A stretch of 64,000 nt of DNA from sequence record NC_047838.1; one strand, given 5' to 3'. Every line of letters starts with the position of its first letter. Position 1 is the stretch's first letter. The notes under the pieces were generated by a model. The model was not told where the DNA came from. It searched no databases and saw only the letters and a program-made list of their open reading frames with translations. Shown piece after piece: positions 44,946 to 54,728 of the stretch. The position numbers and the translations under genes are program-made.

Positions 44946-45156
44946 TTGGCGATATAGTGACGATAAATTAAAACTTCGTCAGCAAGCACTTACCATTCTT
45001 CTTGCAAAGTATGGAAGTGAACTTGACAGCACTAGAAAATCAAAGTATACTAGTCAATCTATATACGAATGTGCCCATGACTGGGTATCTCAAGGTAATG
45101 TAAATTGTAATGGCATTACCGCATACTACGAGGCTTACTATGCAAAAGGTAATTAA
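44935..45156 (+). CDS. hypothetical protein
   Basis: MNDDWRYSDD...YECAHDWVSQG; start at 44935. Confidence 0.65.
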   Translation: MNDDWRYSDDKLKLRQQALTILLAKYGSELDSTRKSKYTSQSIYECAHDWVSQGNVNCNGITAYYEAYYAKGN

Positions 45157-45382
45157 TGTTTTAGCAGTTCTATCGTTCTTAGGAACTGCTGGTATCATCG
45201 GTGGAGGAACAGTTGTTTATCTCCGTCGTGATGCTATCGCTGAAAGTGTCAAAGAGCGTGTTGCTAAAGCGGCAACAGAGGCGATTGCAGGAGCACTTCC
45301 TGGTATGCTAGACGCTGCTATGCCCGAACTTCCTGCTGCTACTGGCGGCGCTATCCCTTCTACAACTGGTCTTCCTTTCTGA
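45140..45382 (+). CDS. membrane-anchored hypothetical protein
   Basis: N-terminal TM segment; start at 45140. Confidence 0.65.
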   Translation: MQKVINVLAVLSFLGTAGIIGGGTVVYLRRDAIAESVKERVAKAATEAIAGALPGMLDAAMPELPAATGGAIPSTTGLPF

Positions 45383-45383
45383 T

Positions 45384-46061
45384 ATGAAAAAACTTATGAT
45401 GGCACTGGCAGCAGCACTTATGACTGCTCCAGTTATGGCAGACCCAATCACAGAAGATGAGTTCTTCACCCCTCATGCTCAGGGGTGCATGTTGCTCCAA
45501 GAATGCACCGATCATGTTCAAGAACTTAAAACAGTTTCTGACCTCAACAAGCATGAGGAACTGGCTGATATTGATTACGGTATTGTTGCTGATGAGTTTA
45601 ACTCTCTCGTCCGATCACTTAATAAGGTCGGAGCTAAGGTTTTTCTAGCAGATATGCGATACTTCCCGGTTGGTCATCGTGGAGTATATCATACTGTAGG
45701 TAACAACTTCTTTCTGAATGTGGCACATATGCATCGTCCTGGCACTATGATGTCAGTTATGCGTCATGAAGGATGGCACGCTGCTCAGGATTGCATGGCA
45801 GGAACAATCGAGAACAACTTTATCGCTATCATTCATGATCAAGAGGATGTACCTCGCATGTATCAGGCAATCGCAAAGAGTGCTTATCAGTCTCAACCAA
45901 AGGCAATTCCTTGGGAGAAAGAAGCATACTGGGCAGGTCATACTGAGGGCATGACTGCGGCAGCACTTGAGTCCTGTGCTGCAGGAACCATGTGGACTGA
46001 TTTTGATCCCACACCCATGACTCGTGAATGGTTGGTTGAAAACGGATTCCTTTCTAAATAG
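45384..46061 (+). CDS. secreted HExxH zinc metallopeptidase-like protein
   Basis: Signal peptide; RHEGWHAAQDC and downstream WEKEA. Confidence 0.65.
   Translation: MKKLMMALAAALMTAPVMADPITEDEFFTPHAQGCMLLQECTDHVQELKTVSDLNKHEELADIDYGIVADEFNSLVRSLNKVGAKVFLADMRYFPVGHRGVYHTVGNNFFLNVAHMHRPGTMMSVMRHEGWHAAQDCMAGTIENNFIAIIHDQEDVPRMYQAIAKSAYQSQPKAIPWEKEAYWAGHTEGMTAAALESCAAGTMWTDFDPTPMTREWLVENGFLSK
46054..46060 (+). promoter_or_regulatory. late promoter candidate CTAAATA
   Basis: 22 nt before the ATG at 46083. Confidence 0.55.
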
Positions 46062-46082
46062 AGTTGCCTTTGCTGGTGACTC

Positions 46083-46538
46083 ATGCCCGAAGAAGTAAAG
46101 AAGGAAGAACCTAAAAAGAAAGGTCCTTTTGGCAGACTGAAAGATAAAGTTGAGGATGCTGATGAACAGATGGCAGTCATCAGCACCTTAGTAAGACTAG
46201 GTATTCTAGTTTGGTCTGGTGGTATTCTTACTCTTAACTATGTGACCATTCCTGGTTTGCCGCAGCAGAAGATCGATCCGACCTTCATAGCCAGCGTGTT
46301 CACTGGGGTTTTAGCTACGTTCGGGGTTCAGACGGCGAAGAAGTCTGGTGATGGCACGATGAAGATGAATGGTGCTAATGGTGTCGCTGCTGCTGGTGGA
46401 CCTGGTGCGATCACCAAGGCAGACCTTGAAAGACTGATCGCTGCTGCTAAGGAAACTGCACCTGCACAGACCATCAGAGTCGAGCAAGGACCAATCAAAA
46501 TCGTAACCGATTCAGAACAACCTCCATACAAAATGTGA
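46083..46538 (+). CDS. two-TM membrane protein
   Basis: LGILVWSGGILTL and FIASVFTGVLATFGV segments. Confidence 0.65.
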   Translation: MPEEVKKEEPKKKGPFGRLKDKVEDADEQMAVISTLVRLGILVWSGGILTLNYVTIPGLPQQKIDPTFIASVFTGVLATFGVQTAKKSGDGTMKMNGANGVAAAGGPGAITKADLERLIAAAKETAPAQTIRVEQGPIKIVTDSEQPPYKM

Positions 46539-46539
46539 T

Positions 46540-47118
46540 ATGAAACCTTACCTCAAGTGGACTGCCATTAGTCTTGGCAGCGTAGTAGCGATTGCACACA
46601 TCGGTGTGCTGGGACATTTGGTTAGGAGAGAACCTGATAGGATTCAGGTCCCGACCATCAACATCCCACGCGGTACTCCATATTCCTCTTACAAAATAGA
46701 GGCGGGTAAGGACGGATATACAATTGAATACAAAGCAAACGATCCTGCTATTCTCGAATCCCAGAGATCATTACATCTTGATCAAGATAAGAAAGGACTC
46801 TTTGGCGGAAAAACTGAGCAGAGAAGAGAGTGGAGACGTGATCAATATACTGCCGAAGGTGTGAGGAACATAGGAGGTGCCGGAACGCTGGCAAGCGAGG
46901 GAAAGTCTGCGAAAGACGTAGAGTGCATCGTGGCGGACGCTGGAGCACGGTCACAAGGTGCGATGGCGGGTAGTGCTGTTGCTACGGGTGTTCTTGTCCC
47001 TGCAGTTGTAAACGTCCCATACATCGGATGGTTGGCAGCAGGTTGGGCAGCATTACTTGGTCAGAATATTGGATCTGCAGCAGGATCTCAGGTCAATTCT
47101 ATGATTAGTGATTGCTGA
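46540..47118 (+). CDS. signal-anchored protein with glycine-zipper-like C-terminus
   Basis: GAMAGSAVATG...GWLAAGWAALLGQNIGSAAG. Confidence 0.6.
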   Translation: MKPYLKWTAISLGSVVAIAHIGVLGHLVRREPDRIQVPTINIPRGTPYSSYKIEAGKDGYTIEYKANDPAILESQRSLHLDQDKKGLFGGKTEQRREWRRDQYTAEGVRNIGGAGTLASEGKSAKDVECIVADAGARSQGAMAGSAVATGVLVPAVVNVPYIGWLAAGWAALLGQNIGSAAGSQVNSMISDC

Positions 47119-51242: not shown

Positions 51243-51639
51243 AGTGTTGGACGGGGACACTATCGATGTTACAATCGATCTCGGTTTTGACCTTTATAAA
51301 AAAGAGAGAGTTAGAGTTGCTGGGGTTGATACCCCAGAGAAAAGAACCAGAGACCTTGAAGAGAAGGCACTCGGAATCGACGCGACAAACTGGCTCAAGG
51401 AGAAGTTAGAAGGTGCTATATCTGGCGACGACGAGCTCGCTGTTAGAACTGAGTTGGTTGGTGGCATGGGTAAGTACGGTCGCCTTCTTGGTTGGTTATA
51501 TATCGGAGACGCAGAACTATCTTTGAATGAGCAGATGATTGCTGAAGGATATGCCTGGGAATATGATGGTGGCACTAAGCAAAAGAATTTTGAAGAGTTG
51601 AGAGAGATACGTAGATCATTTGGTACGTTAAGTGAATGA
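51178..51639 (+). CDS. thermonuclease (SNase-like) endonuclease
   Basis: VLDGDTI, RVAGVDTPE, KYGRLLG. Confidence 0.88.
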   Translation: MGAMTPPSRKSCYNFRVTSIDRVLDGDTIDVTIDLGFDLYKKERVRVAGVDTPEKRTRDLEEKALGIDATNWLKEKLEGAISGDDELAVRTELVGGMGKYGRLLGWLYIGDAELSLNEQMIAEGYAWEYDGGTKQKNFEELREIRRSFGTLSE

Positions 51640-51833
51640 TGGACACCAAACATCAGGTCATAAATCTGATAAAGATCGTCATTCTATTTCAGTTAGGTAT
51701 AGTTGGTACAACCATAGTCGGATGCTTTCTTCCTATGGTCAATAAATGTGACTCTGATACTAAACAACATATTGCTAATATGATGACTGTTATAACTACT
51801 TCAACATTTGCATTATACGCTGCAGAGAAATGA
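51636..51833 (+). CDS. small two-TM hypothetical protein
   Basis: 65 aa ORF in an AT-rich stretch. Confidence 0.5.
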   Translation: MMDTKHQVINLIKIVILFQLGIVGTTIVGCFLPMVNKCDSDTKQHIANMMTVITTSTFALYAAEK

Positions 51834-52072
51834 AAGACCTTAAGATCCCATTTGCTATTGTATCTTTTTTACTTGTTCAGGGTGCTGGTGCCGTATGGTG
51901 GGCGTCTCAAGTAGATGGTAGAGTGAAAAACTTGGAGACTCAGAGTCTTAACATCGCAAAAGAAAATCGTAGATATATCAAAGAAGTTGTAATGCCATCC
52001 TATAATATTAGTGATGGGTGGAAAAATCCTTACTATGAAGATTGGTTGAAGTCTGGAGGTTGGAAAGACTAA
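51830..52072 (+). CDS. signal-anchored hypothetical protein
   Basis: N-terminal TM segment then short coiled coil. Confidence 0.55.
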   Translation: MKDLKIPFAIVSFLLVQGAGAVWWASQVDGRVKNLETQSLNIAKENRRYIKEVVMPSYNISDGWKNPYYEDWLKSGGWKD

Positions 52073-52867
52073 ATGCCAATTCCTGATATTCGACTTAATA
52101 ATATTAATATACGTGATGTTGTAATTCCTGATGTGCCAAAGTGGATGTCATCAGATCCACCAGTGGCACTTCCTGTTGTCCCTCCAATTACGATGGAGAT
52201 AGGGACTCCTATTGTTAATATTCCTGGGTGCGTTGAGGCACACAAAGACAATAAGGAAAATGTAAACTTAAAGAATGAAGATGATAAAGGTGTGATGACC
52301 TTGTGTGATGCAGGCACACCATATTACACTGCTCTTGATTATGATAGAAATAAAATAAAACTAGAACAAAAACCACCTGAACCACCTGCATACAAAGCAC
52401 CACCAGCACCAGAGGCACCAGAAACTAAAACACCAGCAGTTCCTAAGACAGAGGCACCCATGCCTGAGTGTCCTACCAGAGAACAGCAATTAAAAAACCC
52501 CATAGGAAAAATCCTAGAGGGTAATAAAAAGATTACTGGTTATGAAATGGTTGGAAAGGAATGTTTGATGGTCACGGAACAACTAAGTATTCCAGATCAG
52601 ATTATTGGAAACATTCCTAACGCTGGTGCCGTCACTACTACAGCATCTATCGCTGTTGTGGCAACGACCTCTGCACTGCTCGCAAAGCCTCTTGCTGATC
52701 TTTTGTTAAAGGTTGTGAAACCGACTGTGAAGAAGGTAATGAAGAAGGTTGCGACCTTACGGGGTAAGAAGATCCCGGTACAATCGAAAGGGGAGCGCCT
52801 AGCTGAGCAGCGTCAGAGGAATCAGGCTGTGAAGGCGTTGAGGTCGGTTCGACCGCTGAAGAAATAG
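52073..52867 (+). CDS. Pro-rich protein with Cys pairs and C-terminal TM/basic tail
   Basis: PGCVEAH, LCDAG, PPEPPAYKAPPAPE, ASIAVVATTSALL. Confidence 0.65.
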   Translation: MPIPDIRLNNINIRDVVIPDVPKWMSSDPPVALPVVPPITMEIGTPIVNIPGCVEAHKDNKENVNLKNEDDKGVMTLCDAGTPYYTALDYDRNKIKLEQKPPEPPAYKAPPAPEAPETKTPAVPKTEAPMPECPTREQQLKNPIGKILEGNKKITGYEMVGKECLMVTEQLSIPDQIIGNIPNAGAVTTTASIAVVATTSALLAKPLADLLLKVVKPTVKKVMKKVATLRGKKIPVQSKGERLAEQRQRNQAVKALRSVRPLKK

Positions 52868-53636
52868 GTGGAATCGTGTGGCGATGTTGTGCCACAGTAT
52901 TTACATTTTGAACCAACACATCAGCACATACTTTCGCATAAGGACTTCTGGGGTGGAAGCGAATTCCTTTTTGCAATAACTCTCCACAATTTTTTAGACG
53001 CGCCAACTCAAAATCCAATCTCTTGTTAGCAAGTAATTGACCCTGTAGTGCAATTTGTGTTTCTGCTGCTTGTTTACAACGCTCTTGCAATCCACCATCA
53101 AGTGGTAAAGATAGTGTTGCAGAGAGTCCAATACTAGTACTGTAGTTTCTTGTCATACCAGTTCTTACTGGTTTCTGCCAGAGTTGTGATCCTGGGTTAT
53201 CGGGAACACCATCTCCTTGCACTTCCATGACTGTGATAGTCATGTCTTGACCATCTTCATATGCTCTGACTACTTCACCATCAGAGTTTGTGTAAGTTCT
53301 ATCGTCATACCACTCTTCCCATGGCCAGTTCTTGACATTCTTGGTGACCTCTACTACACGACCCTCAAAGTCTCTGTTGTCATACTGAGGTTCCATGTAG
53401 AAAGTTTCAAAAGGATCCTTATCATTACGAGCATGTGTAATATATGGAGTGAAGTTAGCAGTTGGACCTTGACAACTGATACCACCACCATATGTGTTGG
53501 TAATATAAGGACCTTGTAAAACCTGAATTGCCTGGTTGGTCACCGAGCCTGAACTGTTTGCGATTGGATTAGCAGTCGCAGAAACACCTCCCACGTCAGC
53601 AGCGTTGACGGGAGATGCGATTAACAACCCGATTAT
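52647..53636 (-). CDS. secreted-type hypothetical protein (start uncertain)
   Basis: ASPVNA/ADVGG signal-like site, CQGP, CK..KNC..VC cysteines; no ATG near the apparent start. Confidence 0.65.
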   Translation of the reverse strand: MIGLLIASPVNAADVGGVSATANPIANSSGSVTNQAIQVLQGPYITNTYGGGISCQGPTANFTPYITHARNDKDPFETFYMEPQYDNRDFEGRVVEVTKNVKNWPWEEWYDDRTYTNSDGEVVRAYEDGQDMTITVMEVQGDGVPDNPGSQLWQKPVRTGMTRNYSTSIGLSATLSLPLDGGLQERCKQAAETQIALQGQLLANKRLDFELARLKNCGELLQKGIRFHPRSPYAKVCADVLVQNVNTVAQHRHTIPPISSAVEPTSTPSQPDSSDAAQLGAPLSIVPGSSYPVRSQPSSLPSSQSVSQPLTKDQQEALRAVQRSLPQQR

Positions 53637-54103
53637 TGGGTAAAGACACTTGTGGTATCTGTTACCGAAGTAACCTCTGTTGTTCTTTGAATCACGGTTT
53701 GGTTTGTCATTCCTGGACCTTGATAGGTCTGTGTAAACTGGAATGCTTCCCCTGGATTTGTTATGGTGAAGTTCGAGTTGGAGAAGTCTAGTCCAGTTGC
53801 TGAACTTGTTACTTGTCCTTCGATTCCTCCTAGAGGAGTCACATTCACGCTGTTCGTTACTGTTGGGGGAAGGAGTGACGCTCCGTTGTTGGACACGTTT
53901 GTCCCCGAAACTGAATATTGCCATCCTGTTGCATAGTCTATAGAGTTAATTGTCTCAGTTTGCTTAGAAGTCGTTTCAGTGTGGCTGGTCATCGAGCCCT
54001 GTGTGAAGTTCGGGACCACCGGGACTGCTCCAGCAGATTGGACCAGTCCGTGAATAACTCCAAGAATCAATCCGAGACCGATTGCTTCTTGTAGTCTAGT
54101 CAT
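53633..54103 (-). CDS. secreted T/S-rich beta protein (paralog of 54103..54597)
   Basis: Signal peptide AGA/VP; QYSVSGTNV, GEAFQFTQTY. Confidence 0.75.
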   Translation of the reverse strand: MTRLQEAIGLGLILGVIHGLVQSAGAVPVVPNFTQGSMTSHTETTSKQTETINSIDYATGWQYSVSGTNVSNNGASLLPPTVTNSVNVTPLGGIEGQVTSSATGLDFSNSNFTITNPGEAFQFTQTYQGPGMTNQTVIQRTTEVTSVTDTTSVFTQ

Positions 54104-54597
54104 CAGTCGATCACCGTGATTTCACTTACGAATTGGCCGACGGCAGTAGATCCAGCTCCACCTGCCGTGATGCTAATTCCACCGTCAGTAGCGATAGTAC
54201 CTGCCAGGTCACCAGCAGTTCCAGAGGCATAAGAAGTCTGACTGGAGAAGTTACCAACAGCACCTACGGAAGCAGCTGAACTTGGAACTGCATCACCTTG
54301 AATGTAAGATGCACTAAAGGAGAACGCTTCTCCGTCAGTTGCTTGTGTCACAGCGATGTTTCCAGGACCATAGATTCCACTAGTTAAAGTTCCGGTAGAA
54401 ATGGTTCCTGCTGTGGTTCCGTCAGTAGTATTTACATTCGATCCAGATACGCTGTATTGGGAACCCAAGCGAGTTGCGGTGGTTCTTGCACTATCTACAG
54501 TTAACTGGACACTAGAACTCATTTTATGAACCAGCCCTCCTGCATTTGCTGCAGGTGCTGCCATCAAAATCATGATTAATGGGAGGAGTCTTCTCAT
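54103..54597 (-). CDS. secreted T/S/G-rich beta protein
   Basis: Signal peptide ANA/GG; QYSVSGSNV, GEAFSFSASY. Confidence 0.75.
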   Translation of the reverse strand: MRRLLPLIMILMAAPAANAGGLVHKMSSSVQLTVDSARTTATRLGSQYSVSGSNVNTTDGTTAGTISTGTLTSGIYGPGNIAVTQATDGEAFSFSASYIQGDAVPSSAASVGAVGNFSSQTSYASGTAGDLAGTIATDGGISITAGGAGSTAVGQFVSEITVID

Positions 54598-54619
54598 TAC
54601 TAATCACTCTTTGGGTGTG

Positions 54620-54630
54620 TATTTATTTAG
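54620..54630 (-). promoter_or_regulatory. double late promoter CTAAATAAATA for the minus-strand operon
   Basis: Reverse complement gives overlapping CTAAATA and ATAAATA 22 nt upstream of the ATG at 54597. Confidence 0.65.
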
Positions 54631-54694: not shown

Positions 54695-54728
54695 TTGACA
54701 GAATTGTGAAGATCGCTTAATATAAATA
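54695..54728 (+). promoter_or_regulatory. psbA overlapping early and late promoter
   Basis: TTGACA-17-TAATAT with TATAAATA at 54721-54728. Confidence 0.8.

What the first reader, a model, noticed from the sequence alone, without database searches (positions are those of the whole stretch)
52647..54630. Late, minus-strand operon of secreted paralogous beta proteins: candidate phage-encoded surface filament
Seen: the only minus-strand genes in 64 kb, divergent from psbA, behind a double late promoter. Genes A (164 aa) and B (156 aa) have signal peptides and share QYSVSG(S/T)NV and GEAFxFxxxY. Gene C has a signal-like site and several Cys. All are T/S/G-rich. Signal peptides argue against cytoplasmic virion assembly. 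Inference: major, minor and tip or anchor subunits of a fimbria- or curli-like structure built on the infected cell late in infection, for aggregation, grazer avoidance or phage exclusion; the convergent Pro-rich TM gene at 52073 may be an anchor.
Basis: partly seen in the sequence, partly recalled or inferred. Interest (0 to 1): 0.72.

Follow-up and report, generated by a model that had tools for sequence, protein, structure and literature searches.

The report
Late exported-protein operon of cyanophages
Three genes on the "wrong" strand of a marine cyanophage encode proteins that are made late and exported into the host cell envelope, are not known parts of the virus particle, and are packed with conserved gene overlaps; their job is unknown, but they are candidates for the still-missing machinery that opens the host's outer layers.

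Summary
The window is Synechococcus phage Bellamy, a T4-like cyanomyovirus. Genes A (54103-54597), B (53633-54103) and C are the only free-standing minus-strand genes. A and B carry canonical signal peptides and are paralogues (DUF6322). A late-promoter-like motif sits about 25 nt upstream of A.

The cassette is not new. It is Syn9 gp167/166/165 (T4-GC 237/236/235), present in hundreds of cyanomyoviruses and noted in 2010 as a conserved cluster of hypothetical genes. Published data class the P-HM2 homologue of A as late and list no virion proteomic evidence for any member.

New here:
- C most likely starts at a conserved ATG inside B (53924), in B's -1 frame. This gives a basic leader of about 100 aa before a cleavable signal peptide. 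That frame is depleted of stop codons in 96% of 68 loci.
- C's tail overlaps convergent gene D (52073-52867) in antisense, and this overlap is also kept open by selection.
- D and three other small membrane proteins travel with the cassette and form a late "envelope module".

No fold or family match supports a fimbria or curli structure, and none excludes one. My best guess for function, held weakly, is envelope disruption or release in these spanin-less phages.

The parts
54620..54630 (-). Late-promoter-like motif CTAAATAAATA. It contains AATAAATA, a match to NATAAATA, ending 22 nt before A's ATG.
   Evidence: Sequence read. The motif class is enriched upstream of A homologues: 37 of 56 loci against 1.5% background. 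Consensus taken from PMC2984593.
54103..54597 (-). Gene A (Bellamy gp258; Syn9 gp167; T4-GC 237; labelled 'OMP1' in S-RSM2), 164 aa. A Sec-type signal peptide (aa 1-19) precedes a mature protein that is rich in T/S/G/A, has no Cys and is predicted all-beta.
53633..54103 (-). Gene B (gp257; Syn9 gp166; T4-GC 236), 156 aa, Pfam DUF6322. The signal peptide (aa 1-26) is cleaved before an invariant N-terminus, VPVVPNF.QGSMTSHTET. B's ATG overlaps A's stop codon (TGATG).
52647..53924 (-). Gene C, long form (425 aa; gp256; Syn9 gp165; T4-GC 235). It starts at an ATG embedded in B, which GenBank annotates instead as TTG 53627. The mature part (aa 109-425) has an invariant 45-aa N-terminus, a beta-rich core, a long helix, four invariant Cys and an S/P/Q-rich tail.
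53633..53924 (-). Same-strand overlap of B and C. C's leader (aa 1-97) is read in B's -1 (+2) frame.
   Evidence: The frame relation is identical in every locus where B's end was found, about 75, although the gap from B's stop to the VGG motif varies from 35 to 92 nt. The frame is open for about 106 codons against 52 in synonymous shuffles, with P<=0.05 in 96% of 68 loci. It holds a single conserved ATG. The wobble positions of ACA-GGA before TGG are nearly invariant, and wobble T falls from 0.26 to 0.13.
53601..53651 (-). Signal-peptide core of C (aa 92-108, KCLYPIIGLLIASPVNA), with predicted cleavage after Ala108.
   Evidence: Ala at -1 in 65 of 65 loci; uncharged run with median 15 residues (range 10-20); alignment.
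52647..52867 (.). Convergent antisense overlap (221 nt) between C's 3' tail and D's 3' end.
   Evidence: The overlap is 200-335 nt in most loci. D's antisense frame stays open for about 74 codons against 16.5 in synonymous shuffles of D, with P<=0.05 in 46 of 50 loci.
52073..52867 (+). Gene D (gp255; Syn9 gp164; T4-GC 234), 264 aa. It is Pro-rich, has four conserved Cys, a C-terminal hydrophobic segment and a strongly basic tail. It is always adjacent to C.
51636..52072 (+). Two small predicted membrane proteins (gp253, 65 aa; gp254, 80 aa) just upstream of D. They are found in only 8-16 of 86 loci, so they are accessory.
45110..47118 (+). The other half of the conserved module. It holds a 'plasmid stability'-like single-TM protein (45110-45382), a secreted HExxH protein (45384-46061), DUF6450/T4-GC 218 (46083-46538) and T4-GC 219 (46540-47118). 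In Bellamy the gnd/zwf cassette separates this half from D.
   Evidence: PMC3037559 section 27.

Best explanation
Shown. A-B-C is the cyanomyovirus-wide gp167-gp166-gp165 operon. It is transcribed from a T4-type late promoter on the strand opposite to the rest of the genome. A and B are paralogous small proteins (DUF6322), predicted to be rich in beta strands, each with a classical cleavable signal peptide.

Inferred with good support. C is translated from a conserved ATG inside B, in B's -1 frame. The first 100 or so residues are therefore a basic leader with little sequence constraint, followed by a short hydrophobic core and an Ala-x-Ala-type cleavage site. Signal peptidase would discard the whole leader, which would explain why selection keeps that frame open and the ATG in place but hardly constrains the leader's sequence. 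C's low-complexity tail is likewise kept open across the antisense strand of convergent gene D.

Inferred. All three proteins are exported by the host Sec system late in infection and act in the periplasm or outer envelope, not in the virion. They act together with D and three small inner-membrane proteins (T4-GC 218, 'plasmid stability', T4-GC 219), which form one late-expressed module.

Role (weakest step, about 35% on its own). The module remodels or breaches the host envelope at the end of infection. It would be a non-canonical counterpart of the outer-membrane disruption step (spanin-like function) that has not been found in these phages.
For: Conservation and synteny: 360-410 phage records and 80 IMG/VR loci.

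Late timing: promoter motif. In P-HM2, PHM2_191-194 and PHM2_197 are late, PHM2_196 (B) is late in light and middle in dark, and PHM2_195 (C) is the one exception, classed middle. The flanking genes are middle.

Export: signal-peptide statistics and alignments.

Paralogy of A and B.

Internal start of C:
- fixed frame relation despite variable gap lengths;
- stop depletion confined to that frame of B, with controls negative for A, C, D and for B's +1 frame;
- exactly one ATG per locus, re-created at a different Trp codon in the Syn9 group, which lacks the usual Trp;
- invariant wobble bases before the ATG and a shift in wobble composition;
- only 2 of 66 loci have a canonical start codon at B's stop.

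Antisense overlap with D under selection.

Not in virions: PMC3037559 File S1.

Membrane character of the partners.

An open niche for a lysis role: T4 r genes are absent from cyanophages (PMC2984593). Twenty of 91 spanin-less phages infect Prochlorococcus or Synechococcus, and those authors suggest that proteins of non-canonical topology could do the job (PMC6139136).
Against: - There is no experimental evidence for translation from the internal ATG, for export or for any phenotype.
- No Shine-Dalgarno-like element lies at a useful distance from the internal ATG.
- A leader of about 100 aa ahead of a Sec signal is highly unusual.
- The leader's basic charge is mostly a by-product of B's coding sequence (+12.7 observed against +9.3 in shuffles).
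- Synonymous-site entropy in the overlap is only slightly reduced (1.43 against 1.52 bits, P=0.07).
- The P-HM2 homologue of C clusters as 'middle', not late.

Against a lysis role in particular:
- no muralytic, holin, spanin or lipobox feature was found in A-D;
- S-PM2 lyses its host without the cassette (PMC3037559; the cassette was not seen in the 49 kb of S-PM2 examined);
- seven genes is large for a lysis function;
- the conserved-termini, variable-middle pattern of A and B suits a polymer subunit or a surface-binding protein better.
Confidence: 0.5

Rival explanations
1. A (major) and B (minor) polymerise, for example by donor-strand exchange, into a fibre or sheet on or in the envelope of the infected cell. 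C, D or both act as assembly factor or anchor.
For: A and B are small, Cys-free paralogues, predicted to be rich in beta strands. They have conserved N- and C-terminal strands and an indel-rich variable middle. Language-model neighbours of A include the SEF14, Saf, EcpA and FaeF pilins (scores 0.72-0.78). One 44%-identical AlphaFold DB homologue is auto-named DUF4402. The invariant mature N-termini of B and C are predicted to be disordered in a monomer, as expected for segments that fold only on assembly.
Against: The pilin leads fall below the tool's own reliability threshold. Pfam shows no pilin, chaperone, usher, curlin or secretin match in any member. Foldseek and VIA-align find nothing. 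C is unrelated to A and B. No biological rationale has been tested, and no filament has been reported on infected picocyanobacteria in the papers I read.
Confidence: 0.15
2. Receptor masking or exclusion. The exported A, B and C proteins bind or cover envelope receptors late in infection. This would stop progeny, or competing phages, from being wasted on infected cells and lysis debris, in the manner of T5 Llp.
For: The proteins are exported, non-virion and phage-specific. The variable central regions of A, B and C could track receptor diversity. T4's own exclusion and lysis-inhibition genes are missing from cyanophages (PMC2984593).
Against: Known exclusion genes are mostly early, whereas this module is late. 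There is no similarity to Imm, Sp, Llp or Cor families. Nothing here explains the four linked inner-membrane proteins.
Confidence: 0.15
3. Rival for the gene structure only. C is not translated from inside B. It initiates by termination-reinitiation at the codon that overlaps B's stop, and the upstream open frame is not used.
For: In L058 and L079 that codon is GTG, in a GTGA start-stop overlap, which gives a textbook signal peptide. In loci such as P-SSM2 a start there would give M-K plus a hydrophobic core. This start also explains the fixed frame relation.
Against: The codon is ATA or GTA in 64 of 66 loci. In Bellamy a start there leaves no charged n-region and only about 12 residues before the predicted cleavage site. 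It does not explain the stop depletion over about 100 codons, the single conserved ATG or the invariant wobble bases before it.
Confidence: 0.2
4. A, B and C are minor virion or assembly proteins that proteomics has missed.
For: They are expressed late together with structural genes. In S-PM2 the minus-strand genes next to psbA are virion structural proteins, although these are unrelated to A-C.
Against: All three have canonical cleavable signal peptides. No proteomic evidence exists from the S-SM1, Syn9 or S-PM2 virion studies. The cassette is absent from S-PM2, which has the same T4-type virion plan.
Confidence: 0.03

Closest known systems
Syn9 gp164-gp167 / T4-GC 234-237, the 'mobile hypothetical gene cluster' of cyanomyoviruses (Sullivan et al. 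2010, PMC3037559)
   Same: It is the same genes: 50-60% identity to Syn9 and P-SSM2, with the same order and strand arrangement. It was already noted as conserved in 15 of 16 cyanomyoviruses, clustered 'for functional reasons' and linked to a 'plasmid stability' gene.
   Different: The 2010 description gives no function, no mention of export signals, no A/B paralogy and no account of the overlaps. Start-codon annotation of gp165 homologues differs between records: TTG after B in Bellamy, GTG in P-SSM2, and an ATG inside B in Syn9, P-HM2 and S-SM2.
Lambda Rz/Rz1 and other embedded or overlapped spanin gene pairs
   Same: Both are late phage genes for envelope proteins, with one reading frame overprinted on another and both kept by selection. 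Both are frequently mis-annotated. An outer-membrane step is expected after holin and endolysin action.
   Different: No lipobox or lipoprotein is present, and no type II i-spanin with a coiled coil was detected. Here the downstream gene's leader, not its functional domain, lies inside the upstream gene. These phages are formally 'spanin-less' (PMC6139136).
Chaperone-usher and other donor-strand pilins (Saf, SEF14, EcpA, Csu/SCPU)
   Same: Size, signal peptide, predicted beta-strand content, a T/S/G/A-rich composition without Cys, and conserved terminal strands with a variable middle. There are also weak language-model similarities.
   Different: There is no detectable homology, no chaperone or usher gene, and no confident Ig-like model.
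Extended signal peptides (for example ESPR of autotransporters) and long leaders
   Same: In both, an N-terminal extension precedes an otherwise normal n-h-c signal peptide.
   Different: The extension here is about four times longer (median leader 118 aa). It is encoded by overprinting on another gene and shows almost no sequence constraint of its own.
T4 periplasm-acting proteins (holin T, antiholin RI, Sp, Imm)
   Same: Both are proteins of a T4-type phage that act in the envelope.
   Different: There is no sequence or family similarity, and the T4 r genes are reported absent from cyanophages.

Membership tests
Pfam DUF6322 (PF19847) | Significant match to the family HMM above the gathering score | tested here: met
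   B scores E 1.2e-38 and 132 bits against a cut-off of 30.6, covering the full profile.
Pfam DUF6322 (PF19847) | Gene A also belongs to the family (paralogy with B) | tested here: inconclusive
   The local Pfam copy gives A only 13.6 bits, and 27 of 52 A-family members match weakly. However, precomputed PF19847.5 is listed for A's close homologues, Atlas 'OMP1' clusters are 100% DUF6322, and hhalign of A against B gives 95.5% probability, E 1.4e-8.
Chaperone-usher fimbriae | A dedicated periplasmic PapD-like chaperone and an outer-membrane usher encoded with the subunits | tested here: not met
   C, D and their neighbours have no Pfam or NCBIfam match to such families. No ORF in the cassette is of usher size.
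Chaperone-usher fimbriae | An incomplete Ig-like pilin fold completed by a donor strand | tested here: inconclusive
   The model of A is all-beta with long first and last strands, but pLDDT is 62.5 and pTM 0.31. There is no PDB match (Foldseek E 9.8; VIA Z at most 2.4).
Curli (CsgA/CsgB) | Tandem curlin repeats and CsgG/E/F secretion genes | tested here: not met
   No Curlin_rpt or Csg family appears among Pfam matches at E up to 10 for 52 A-family and 42 C-family members. No internal repeats are visible in the alignments.
Two-component spanins (Rz/Rz1 type) | An o-spanin lipoprotein with a lipobox Cys, and an i-spanin with an N-terminal TMD plus a periplasmic coiled coil | tested here: not met
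   A and B have no Cys at all. The cleavage sites are of the Ala-x-Ala type, not a lipobox. Related phages are listed as spanin-less in PMC6139136. C does have a long helix and four Cys, so a functional analogy is not excluded.
Outer-membrane beta-barrel protein (the legacy label 'OMP1') | A C-terminal aromatic beta-signal, aromatic girdles, and an OMP family match | tested here: not met
   The last residue of A is D, R, K, N or H in 57 of 57 sequences, and aromatic content is 5%. There is no OMP family hit.
Overprinted (dual-coding) phage genes | A second reading frame kept open beyond what the first gene's protein sequence and codon usage predict, with a conserved start | tested here: met
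   B/C overlap. C/D antisense overlap. Translation itself is not testable with these tools.
Virion structural proteins of T4-like cyanophages | Detection in purified virions | tested here: not met
   The column 'Existence of Proteomic Data?' is blank for T4-GC 234, 235, 236 and 237, while it reads YES for known structural clusters (PMC3037559 File S1).

The most novel reading that the evidence does not exclude
The seven-gene late module is a previously unrecognised kind of phage envelope machine specific to picocyanobacteria. Four small inner-membrane proteins, D among them, would be coupled to three exported proteins (A, B, C). A and B would polymerise through their conserved terminal strands into a trans-envelope or surface structure that either breaches the outer membrane and S-layer for virion release or coats the dying cell. 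C's expression level would be set by an overprinted, disposable 100-aa leader and by an antisense overlap with D.
Probability: 0.15. Interest if true: 0.85.

Novelty: new variant of a known kind. Interest (0 to 1): 0.55.

Why it matters
T4-like cyanophages kill a large share of the ocean's Prochlorococcus and Synechococcus, yet how they open the cell envelope is unknown. They lack T4's holin and r genes and are catalogued as spanin-less. A module that is late-expressed, exported, absent from virions and conserved in nearly all of these phages is the obvious place to look, and it can be tested directly by deletion, by lambda spanin complementation and by cryo-ET.

Separately, gene C is a clean natural example of a gene overprinted at both ends: its 5' leader lies inside B and its 3' tail runs antisense to D. 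This has practical consequences, because its start codon is annotated in at least three different ways across GenBank records. It also raises a mechanistic question: how does a Sec signal work behind a leader of about 100 residues?

Tried and rejected
- **PDB sequence search with family profiles.** Nothing for A or C. B's E of about 1e-7 to the designed WRAP-T propellers is a sum of eight individually insignificant repeat matches, so it is an artefact.
- **AlphaFold2 of C (long form) and A.** Both models are of low confidence.
- **Structure searches.** Foldseek against PDB and AlphaFold DB clusters, and VIA-align wide search, return only the family's own homologues or trivial long-helix matches.
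- **ESM Atlas.** Own families only, plus sub-threshold pilin leads for A.
- **Exhaustive profile search with C.** 596 cluster representatives were found. The 150 shown are all family members or fragments, so no distant relative was visible.
- **Scan of 185k genomes with A.** Only phage contigs mis-binned into MAGs or SAGs, and no cellular homologue.
- **NCBIfam and PHROGs.** NCBIfam finds nothing; PHROGs finds only unknown-function families 564, 650, 848/1755 and 570.
- **-1 programmed frameshift from B into C.** Rejected. There is no slippery heptamer in the conserved TTT-ACN-CAR-TAR end of B, and a frameshift would not need 100 open codons or an ATG.
- **C as a paralogue of A and B.** Rejected.
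- **Literature.** Doron 2016 (Syn9 transcriptome) and Millard 2004 (origin of the 'OMP1' name) are not in the held library.
- **S-PM2.** The paper reports it as the one phage lacking the cluster. The 49 kb I examined around psbA has none of these gene clusters.
Full report
**Identity and observation**

The window is the last 64 kb of Synechococcus phage Bellamy (MF351863), a T4-like cyanomyovirus of the Kyanoviridae, at 100% identity. The three minus-strand ORFs are gp258 (A, 54103-54597), gp257 (B, 53633-54103) and gp256 (C).

They are the only minus-strand ORFs of at least 90 aa that do not lie mostly inside a plus-strand ORF.

- A begins with a textbook signal peptide ending ANA|GG.
- B's signal peptide is cleaved before an invariant VPVVPNF.
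- C has a short hydrophobic stretch ending VNA|AD and four invariant cysteines.

**How widespread it is**

tblastn finds A in 360 phage records and C in 410, all from Synechococcus or Prochlorococcus phages or marine viral contigs. Eighty IMG/VR loci fetched with C show the same order: A, B, C, then a convergent gene D, the homologue of Bellamy gp255 at 52073-52867.

The homologues are gp167, gp166, gp165 and gp164 in Syn9, PCMG_00245 to PCMG_00242 in P-SSM2, and PHM2_197 to PHM2_194 in P-HM2. The cassette always runs against the surrounding genes. Its neighbour on the A side varies (psbA, hsp20, hli03, talC), so divergence from psbA is a Bellamy/S-SM2 feature and not a property of the cassette.

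A scan of 185,579 genomes found only phage contigs binned into MAGs or single-cell assemblies. I saw no cellular homologue.

**What was already known**

Sullivan et al. [quoted passage not shown] They suggested that the genes are clustered for functional reasons.

Their File S1 has a column 'Existence of Proteomic Data?'. It is blank for T4-GC 234-237, while known structural clusters read YES.

Thompson et al. 2016 (PMC5082946, S2 Table) clustered P-HM2 transcripts in light and in dark:

| P-HM2 gene | Homologue | Light | Dark |
|---|---|---|---|
| PHM2_197 | A | Late (E), with g53 and g48 | Late (E) |
| PHM2_196 | B | Late (D) | Mid (C) |
| PHM2_195 | C | Mid (C) | Mid (C) |
| PHM2_194 | D | Late (D) | Late (D) |
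| PHM2_193 | - | Late (D) | Late (D) |
| PHM2_192 | 'plasmid stability' | Late (E) | Late (D) |
| PHM2_191 | T4-GC 218 | Late (E) | Late (D) |

The flanking genes PHM2_190 and PHM2_198 are middle. A is labelled 'OMP1' in S-RSM2; I could not read the paper that coined the name.

**Promoter**

CTAAATAAATA at 54630-54620 contains one match to the cyanophage late consensus NATAAATA (PMC2984593). The motif class [CT]TA[AT]ATA lies 15-50 nt upstream of A's ATG in 37 of 56 loci. The figures for the other genes are 9 of 65 for B, 0 of 65 for C and 1 of 70 for D, and the background is 1.5% of 36-nt windows. Together with the P-HM2 data this supports 'late'. I see one site rather than a double promoter.

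**A and B are paralogues; C is not**

B is Pfam DUF6322 (E 1.2e-38). A scores below threshold in the local Pfam copy. However, A's close homologues carry precomputed PF19847.5, and Atlas 'OMP1' clusters are 100% DUF6322. hhalign of the A and B alignments gives 95.5% probability and E 1.4e-8, with the two motifs in register.

Both families have no cysteine, few aromatic residues, and conserved N- and C-terminal segments around an indel-rich middle. C shows no relationship to either (probability below 1%).

**The B/C overlap (main new result)**

The distance from B's stop to C's invariant VGGVSATA motif takes at least ten different values between 35 and 92 nt. In every locus where I could place B's stop, about 75 in all, that distance is 2 mod 3, so C is always in B's +2 (-1) frame.

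That frame stays open through the last 100-110 codons of B. Synonymous-codon shuffles that preserve B's protein give a longest open run of about 52 codons, against 106 observed. The excess is significant (P<=0.05) in 96% of 68 loci. It is absent from B's other frame and from both alternative frames of A, C and D.

Within the open stretch every locus has exactly one canonical start codon, an ATG 97-108 codons before B's end. It is created by the Gly-Trp of B's conserved TGW motif. The Syn9 group lacks that Trp. There the open frame is shorter, and an ATG is created at a different Trp codon 55 codons before B's end.

The two four-fold sites just before the ATG (ACA, GGA) have entropies of 0.3 and 0.2 bits, against 1.0-2.0 at most other four-fold sites in B. 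After the ATG, wobble T halves (0.26 to 0.13) and wobble A rises (0.33 to 0.52).

The codon overlapping B's stop is ATA or GTA in 64 of 66 loci and GTG in only two.

I conclude that C most likely starts at 53924 (425 aa). S-SM2, Syn9 and P-HM2 are annotated with an internal start of this kind, and the Bellamy (TTG 53627) and P-SSM2 (GTG) annotations are probably wrong.

The leader is basic. Its median net charge is +13, though this is largely a by-product of B's codons (+12.7 observed against +9.3 in shuffles). Synonymous-site entropy is barely reduced in the overlap.

This fits a leader that only has to stay open. It is followed by an uncharged run of median 15 residues (range 10-20) and by Ala at -1 in 65 of 65 loci. 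That is a signal peptide rather than a membrane anchor, so signal peptidase would remove the whole leader.

**The C/D overlap**

C's S/P/Q-rich tail overlaps D's 3' end in antisense by 200-335 nt in most loci, and by 221 nt in Bellamy. D's antisense frame is open for about 74 codons against 16.5 in synonymous shuffles of D, with P<=0.05 in 46 of 50 loci. About 40% of gene C is therefore dual-coding.

In L069 and L083 D lies on the cassette's own strand directly after C, and the flanking genes on both sides run the other way. D therefore travels with the cassette whichever way it is oriented.

**The wider module**

D is Pro-rich, with four conserved Cys, a hydrophobic C-terminal segment and a basic tail. 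The genes next to D in other phages are all small predicted membrane proteins: Syn9 gp163/T4-GC 219, gp162 'plasmid stability' and gp161/T4-GC 218 (DUF6450).

Bellamy's copies lie at 45110-47118. The gnd/zwf cassette separates them from D, as Sullivan et al. noted for S-SM2. The unit is therefore four membrane proteins plus three exported proteins, late-expressed and not known from virions.

**Fold and family searches**

The AlphaFold2 model of C has pLDDT 48.8. The leader, the invariant N-terminus and the tail are disordered. Strands span 141-271 and a helix spans 277-318. The model of A has pLDDT 62.5 and is all-beta, with long first and last strands.

No search gave a meaningful match outside the families themselves. 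This covers PDB, AlphaFold DB, VIA-align, PDB sequence profiles, NCBIfam, PHROGs and the Atlas. B's apparent hit to the designed WRAP-T proteins is an artefact of repeat summation. The only hint towards pilins is a set of sub-threshold Atlas neighbours of A.

**Interpretation**

Late expression, Sec export, absence from virion proteomes and linkage to inner-membrane proteins all point to action on the host envelope at the end of infection.

Cyanomyoviruses lack T4's r genes. They also make up 20 of the 91 'spanin-less' phages in Kongari et al. 2018, who proposed that proteins of other topologies might substitute. I therefore rank envelope breaching or release first, at about 35%.

A polymer or fibre comes next, at about 15%. 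It is favoured by the pilin-like conservation pattern of A and B but has no machinery to support it. Receptor masking is also at about 15%. The remaining probability is unassigned.

Points against the lysis reading are that S-PM2 lacks the cassette and that no muralytic or lipoprotein component is present.

**Novelty**

The cassette and DUF6322 are already catalogued. The following are, as far as I could find, not described:

- the export signals and the A/B paralogy as a stated result;
- the double overprinting of C;
- the recognition of a seven-gene late envelope module.

It is a new variant of known kinds (phage late envelope genes and overprinted genes), with real potential to address how cyanophages exit their hosts.

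Noticed in passing
window 45384-46061 (+): A 225-aa ORF with a clear signal peptide (MKKLMMALAAALMTAPVMA|DP) and an HExxH motif (HEGWH). It gives a weak Pfam Peptidase_Mx1 hit (E 0.019). It sits between the 'plasmid stability'-like gene and the DUF6450 gene, so it may be a secreted metallopeptidase within the envelope module.
   Followed up: partly
window 45110-47118 (+): Homologues of Syn9 gp162 ('plasmid stability', one TM segment), gp161 (DUF6450, two TM segments) and gp163 (TM segments at both ends). In other phages they adjoin D. In Bellamy the plastocyanin, gnd and zwf genes separate them from it.
   Followed up: partly
window 51636-52072 (+): Two small ORFs just upstream of D: gp253 (65 aa, two hydrophobic segments, holin-like in size) and gp254 (80 aa, an N-terminal hydrophobic segment followed by a charged helix). 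They are present in only 8 and 16 of 86 loci.
   Followed up: partly
window 54695-54728 (+): Upstream of psbA, a sigma-70-like TTGACA-17-TAATAT (10 of 12 matches) overlaps an exact T4 late TATAAATA at 54721-54728. This is one of only three exact copies in the window, which is no more than chance expects (mean 2.07 in shuffles).
   Followed up: no
GenBank records MF351863, GU071092, NC_008296, NC_015284, GU071095: The start of the gp165 homologue is annotated in three incompatible ways: TTG after B, GTG after B, or an ATG inside B. In S-SM2 the B homologue is not annotated at all.
   Followed up: yes
L069:397-2380 and L083:2477-5148: In these two contigs D is inverted onto the cassette's strand and overlaps C's end by about 17-23 nt. 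C then lacks the long S/P/Q tail (382-387 aa).
   Followed up: partly
L055:4307-4804 (also L047, L050-L052): An extra 165-aa ORF on the cassette strand is inserted between C and D, so those loci have no C/D overlap. I did not search it against any family.
   Followed up: no
L088-L100 (genome-contig hits): Cyanophage-like contigs carrying gene A are filed under MAGs or isolates named Lewinella, Euryarchaeota, Bacteroidetes, Nonlabens xiamenensis, Chloroflexota and Gammaproteobacteria. This is probably binning or assembly contamination. One hit is a 194-kb contig in a Synechococcus MAG.
   Followed up: no
L086 (S-PM2 125029-135094): In S-PM2, which lacks the cassette, the minus-strand genes divergent from psbA are three very large virion structural proteins. 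A separate small cluster (p157 'putative lysin', p160 'lipoprotein precursor') might be that phage's own lysis genes.
   Followed up: no
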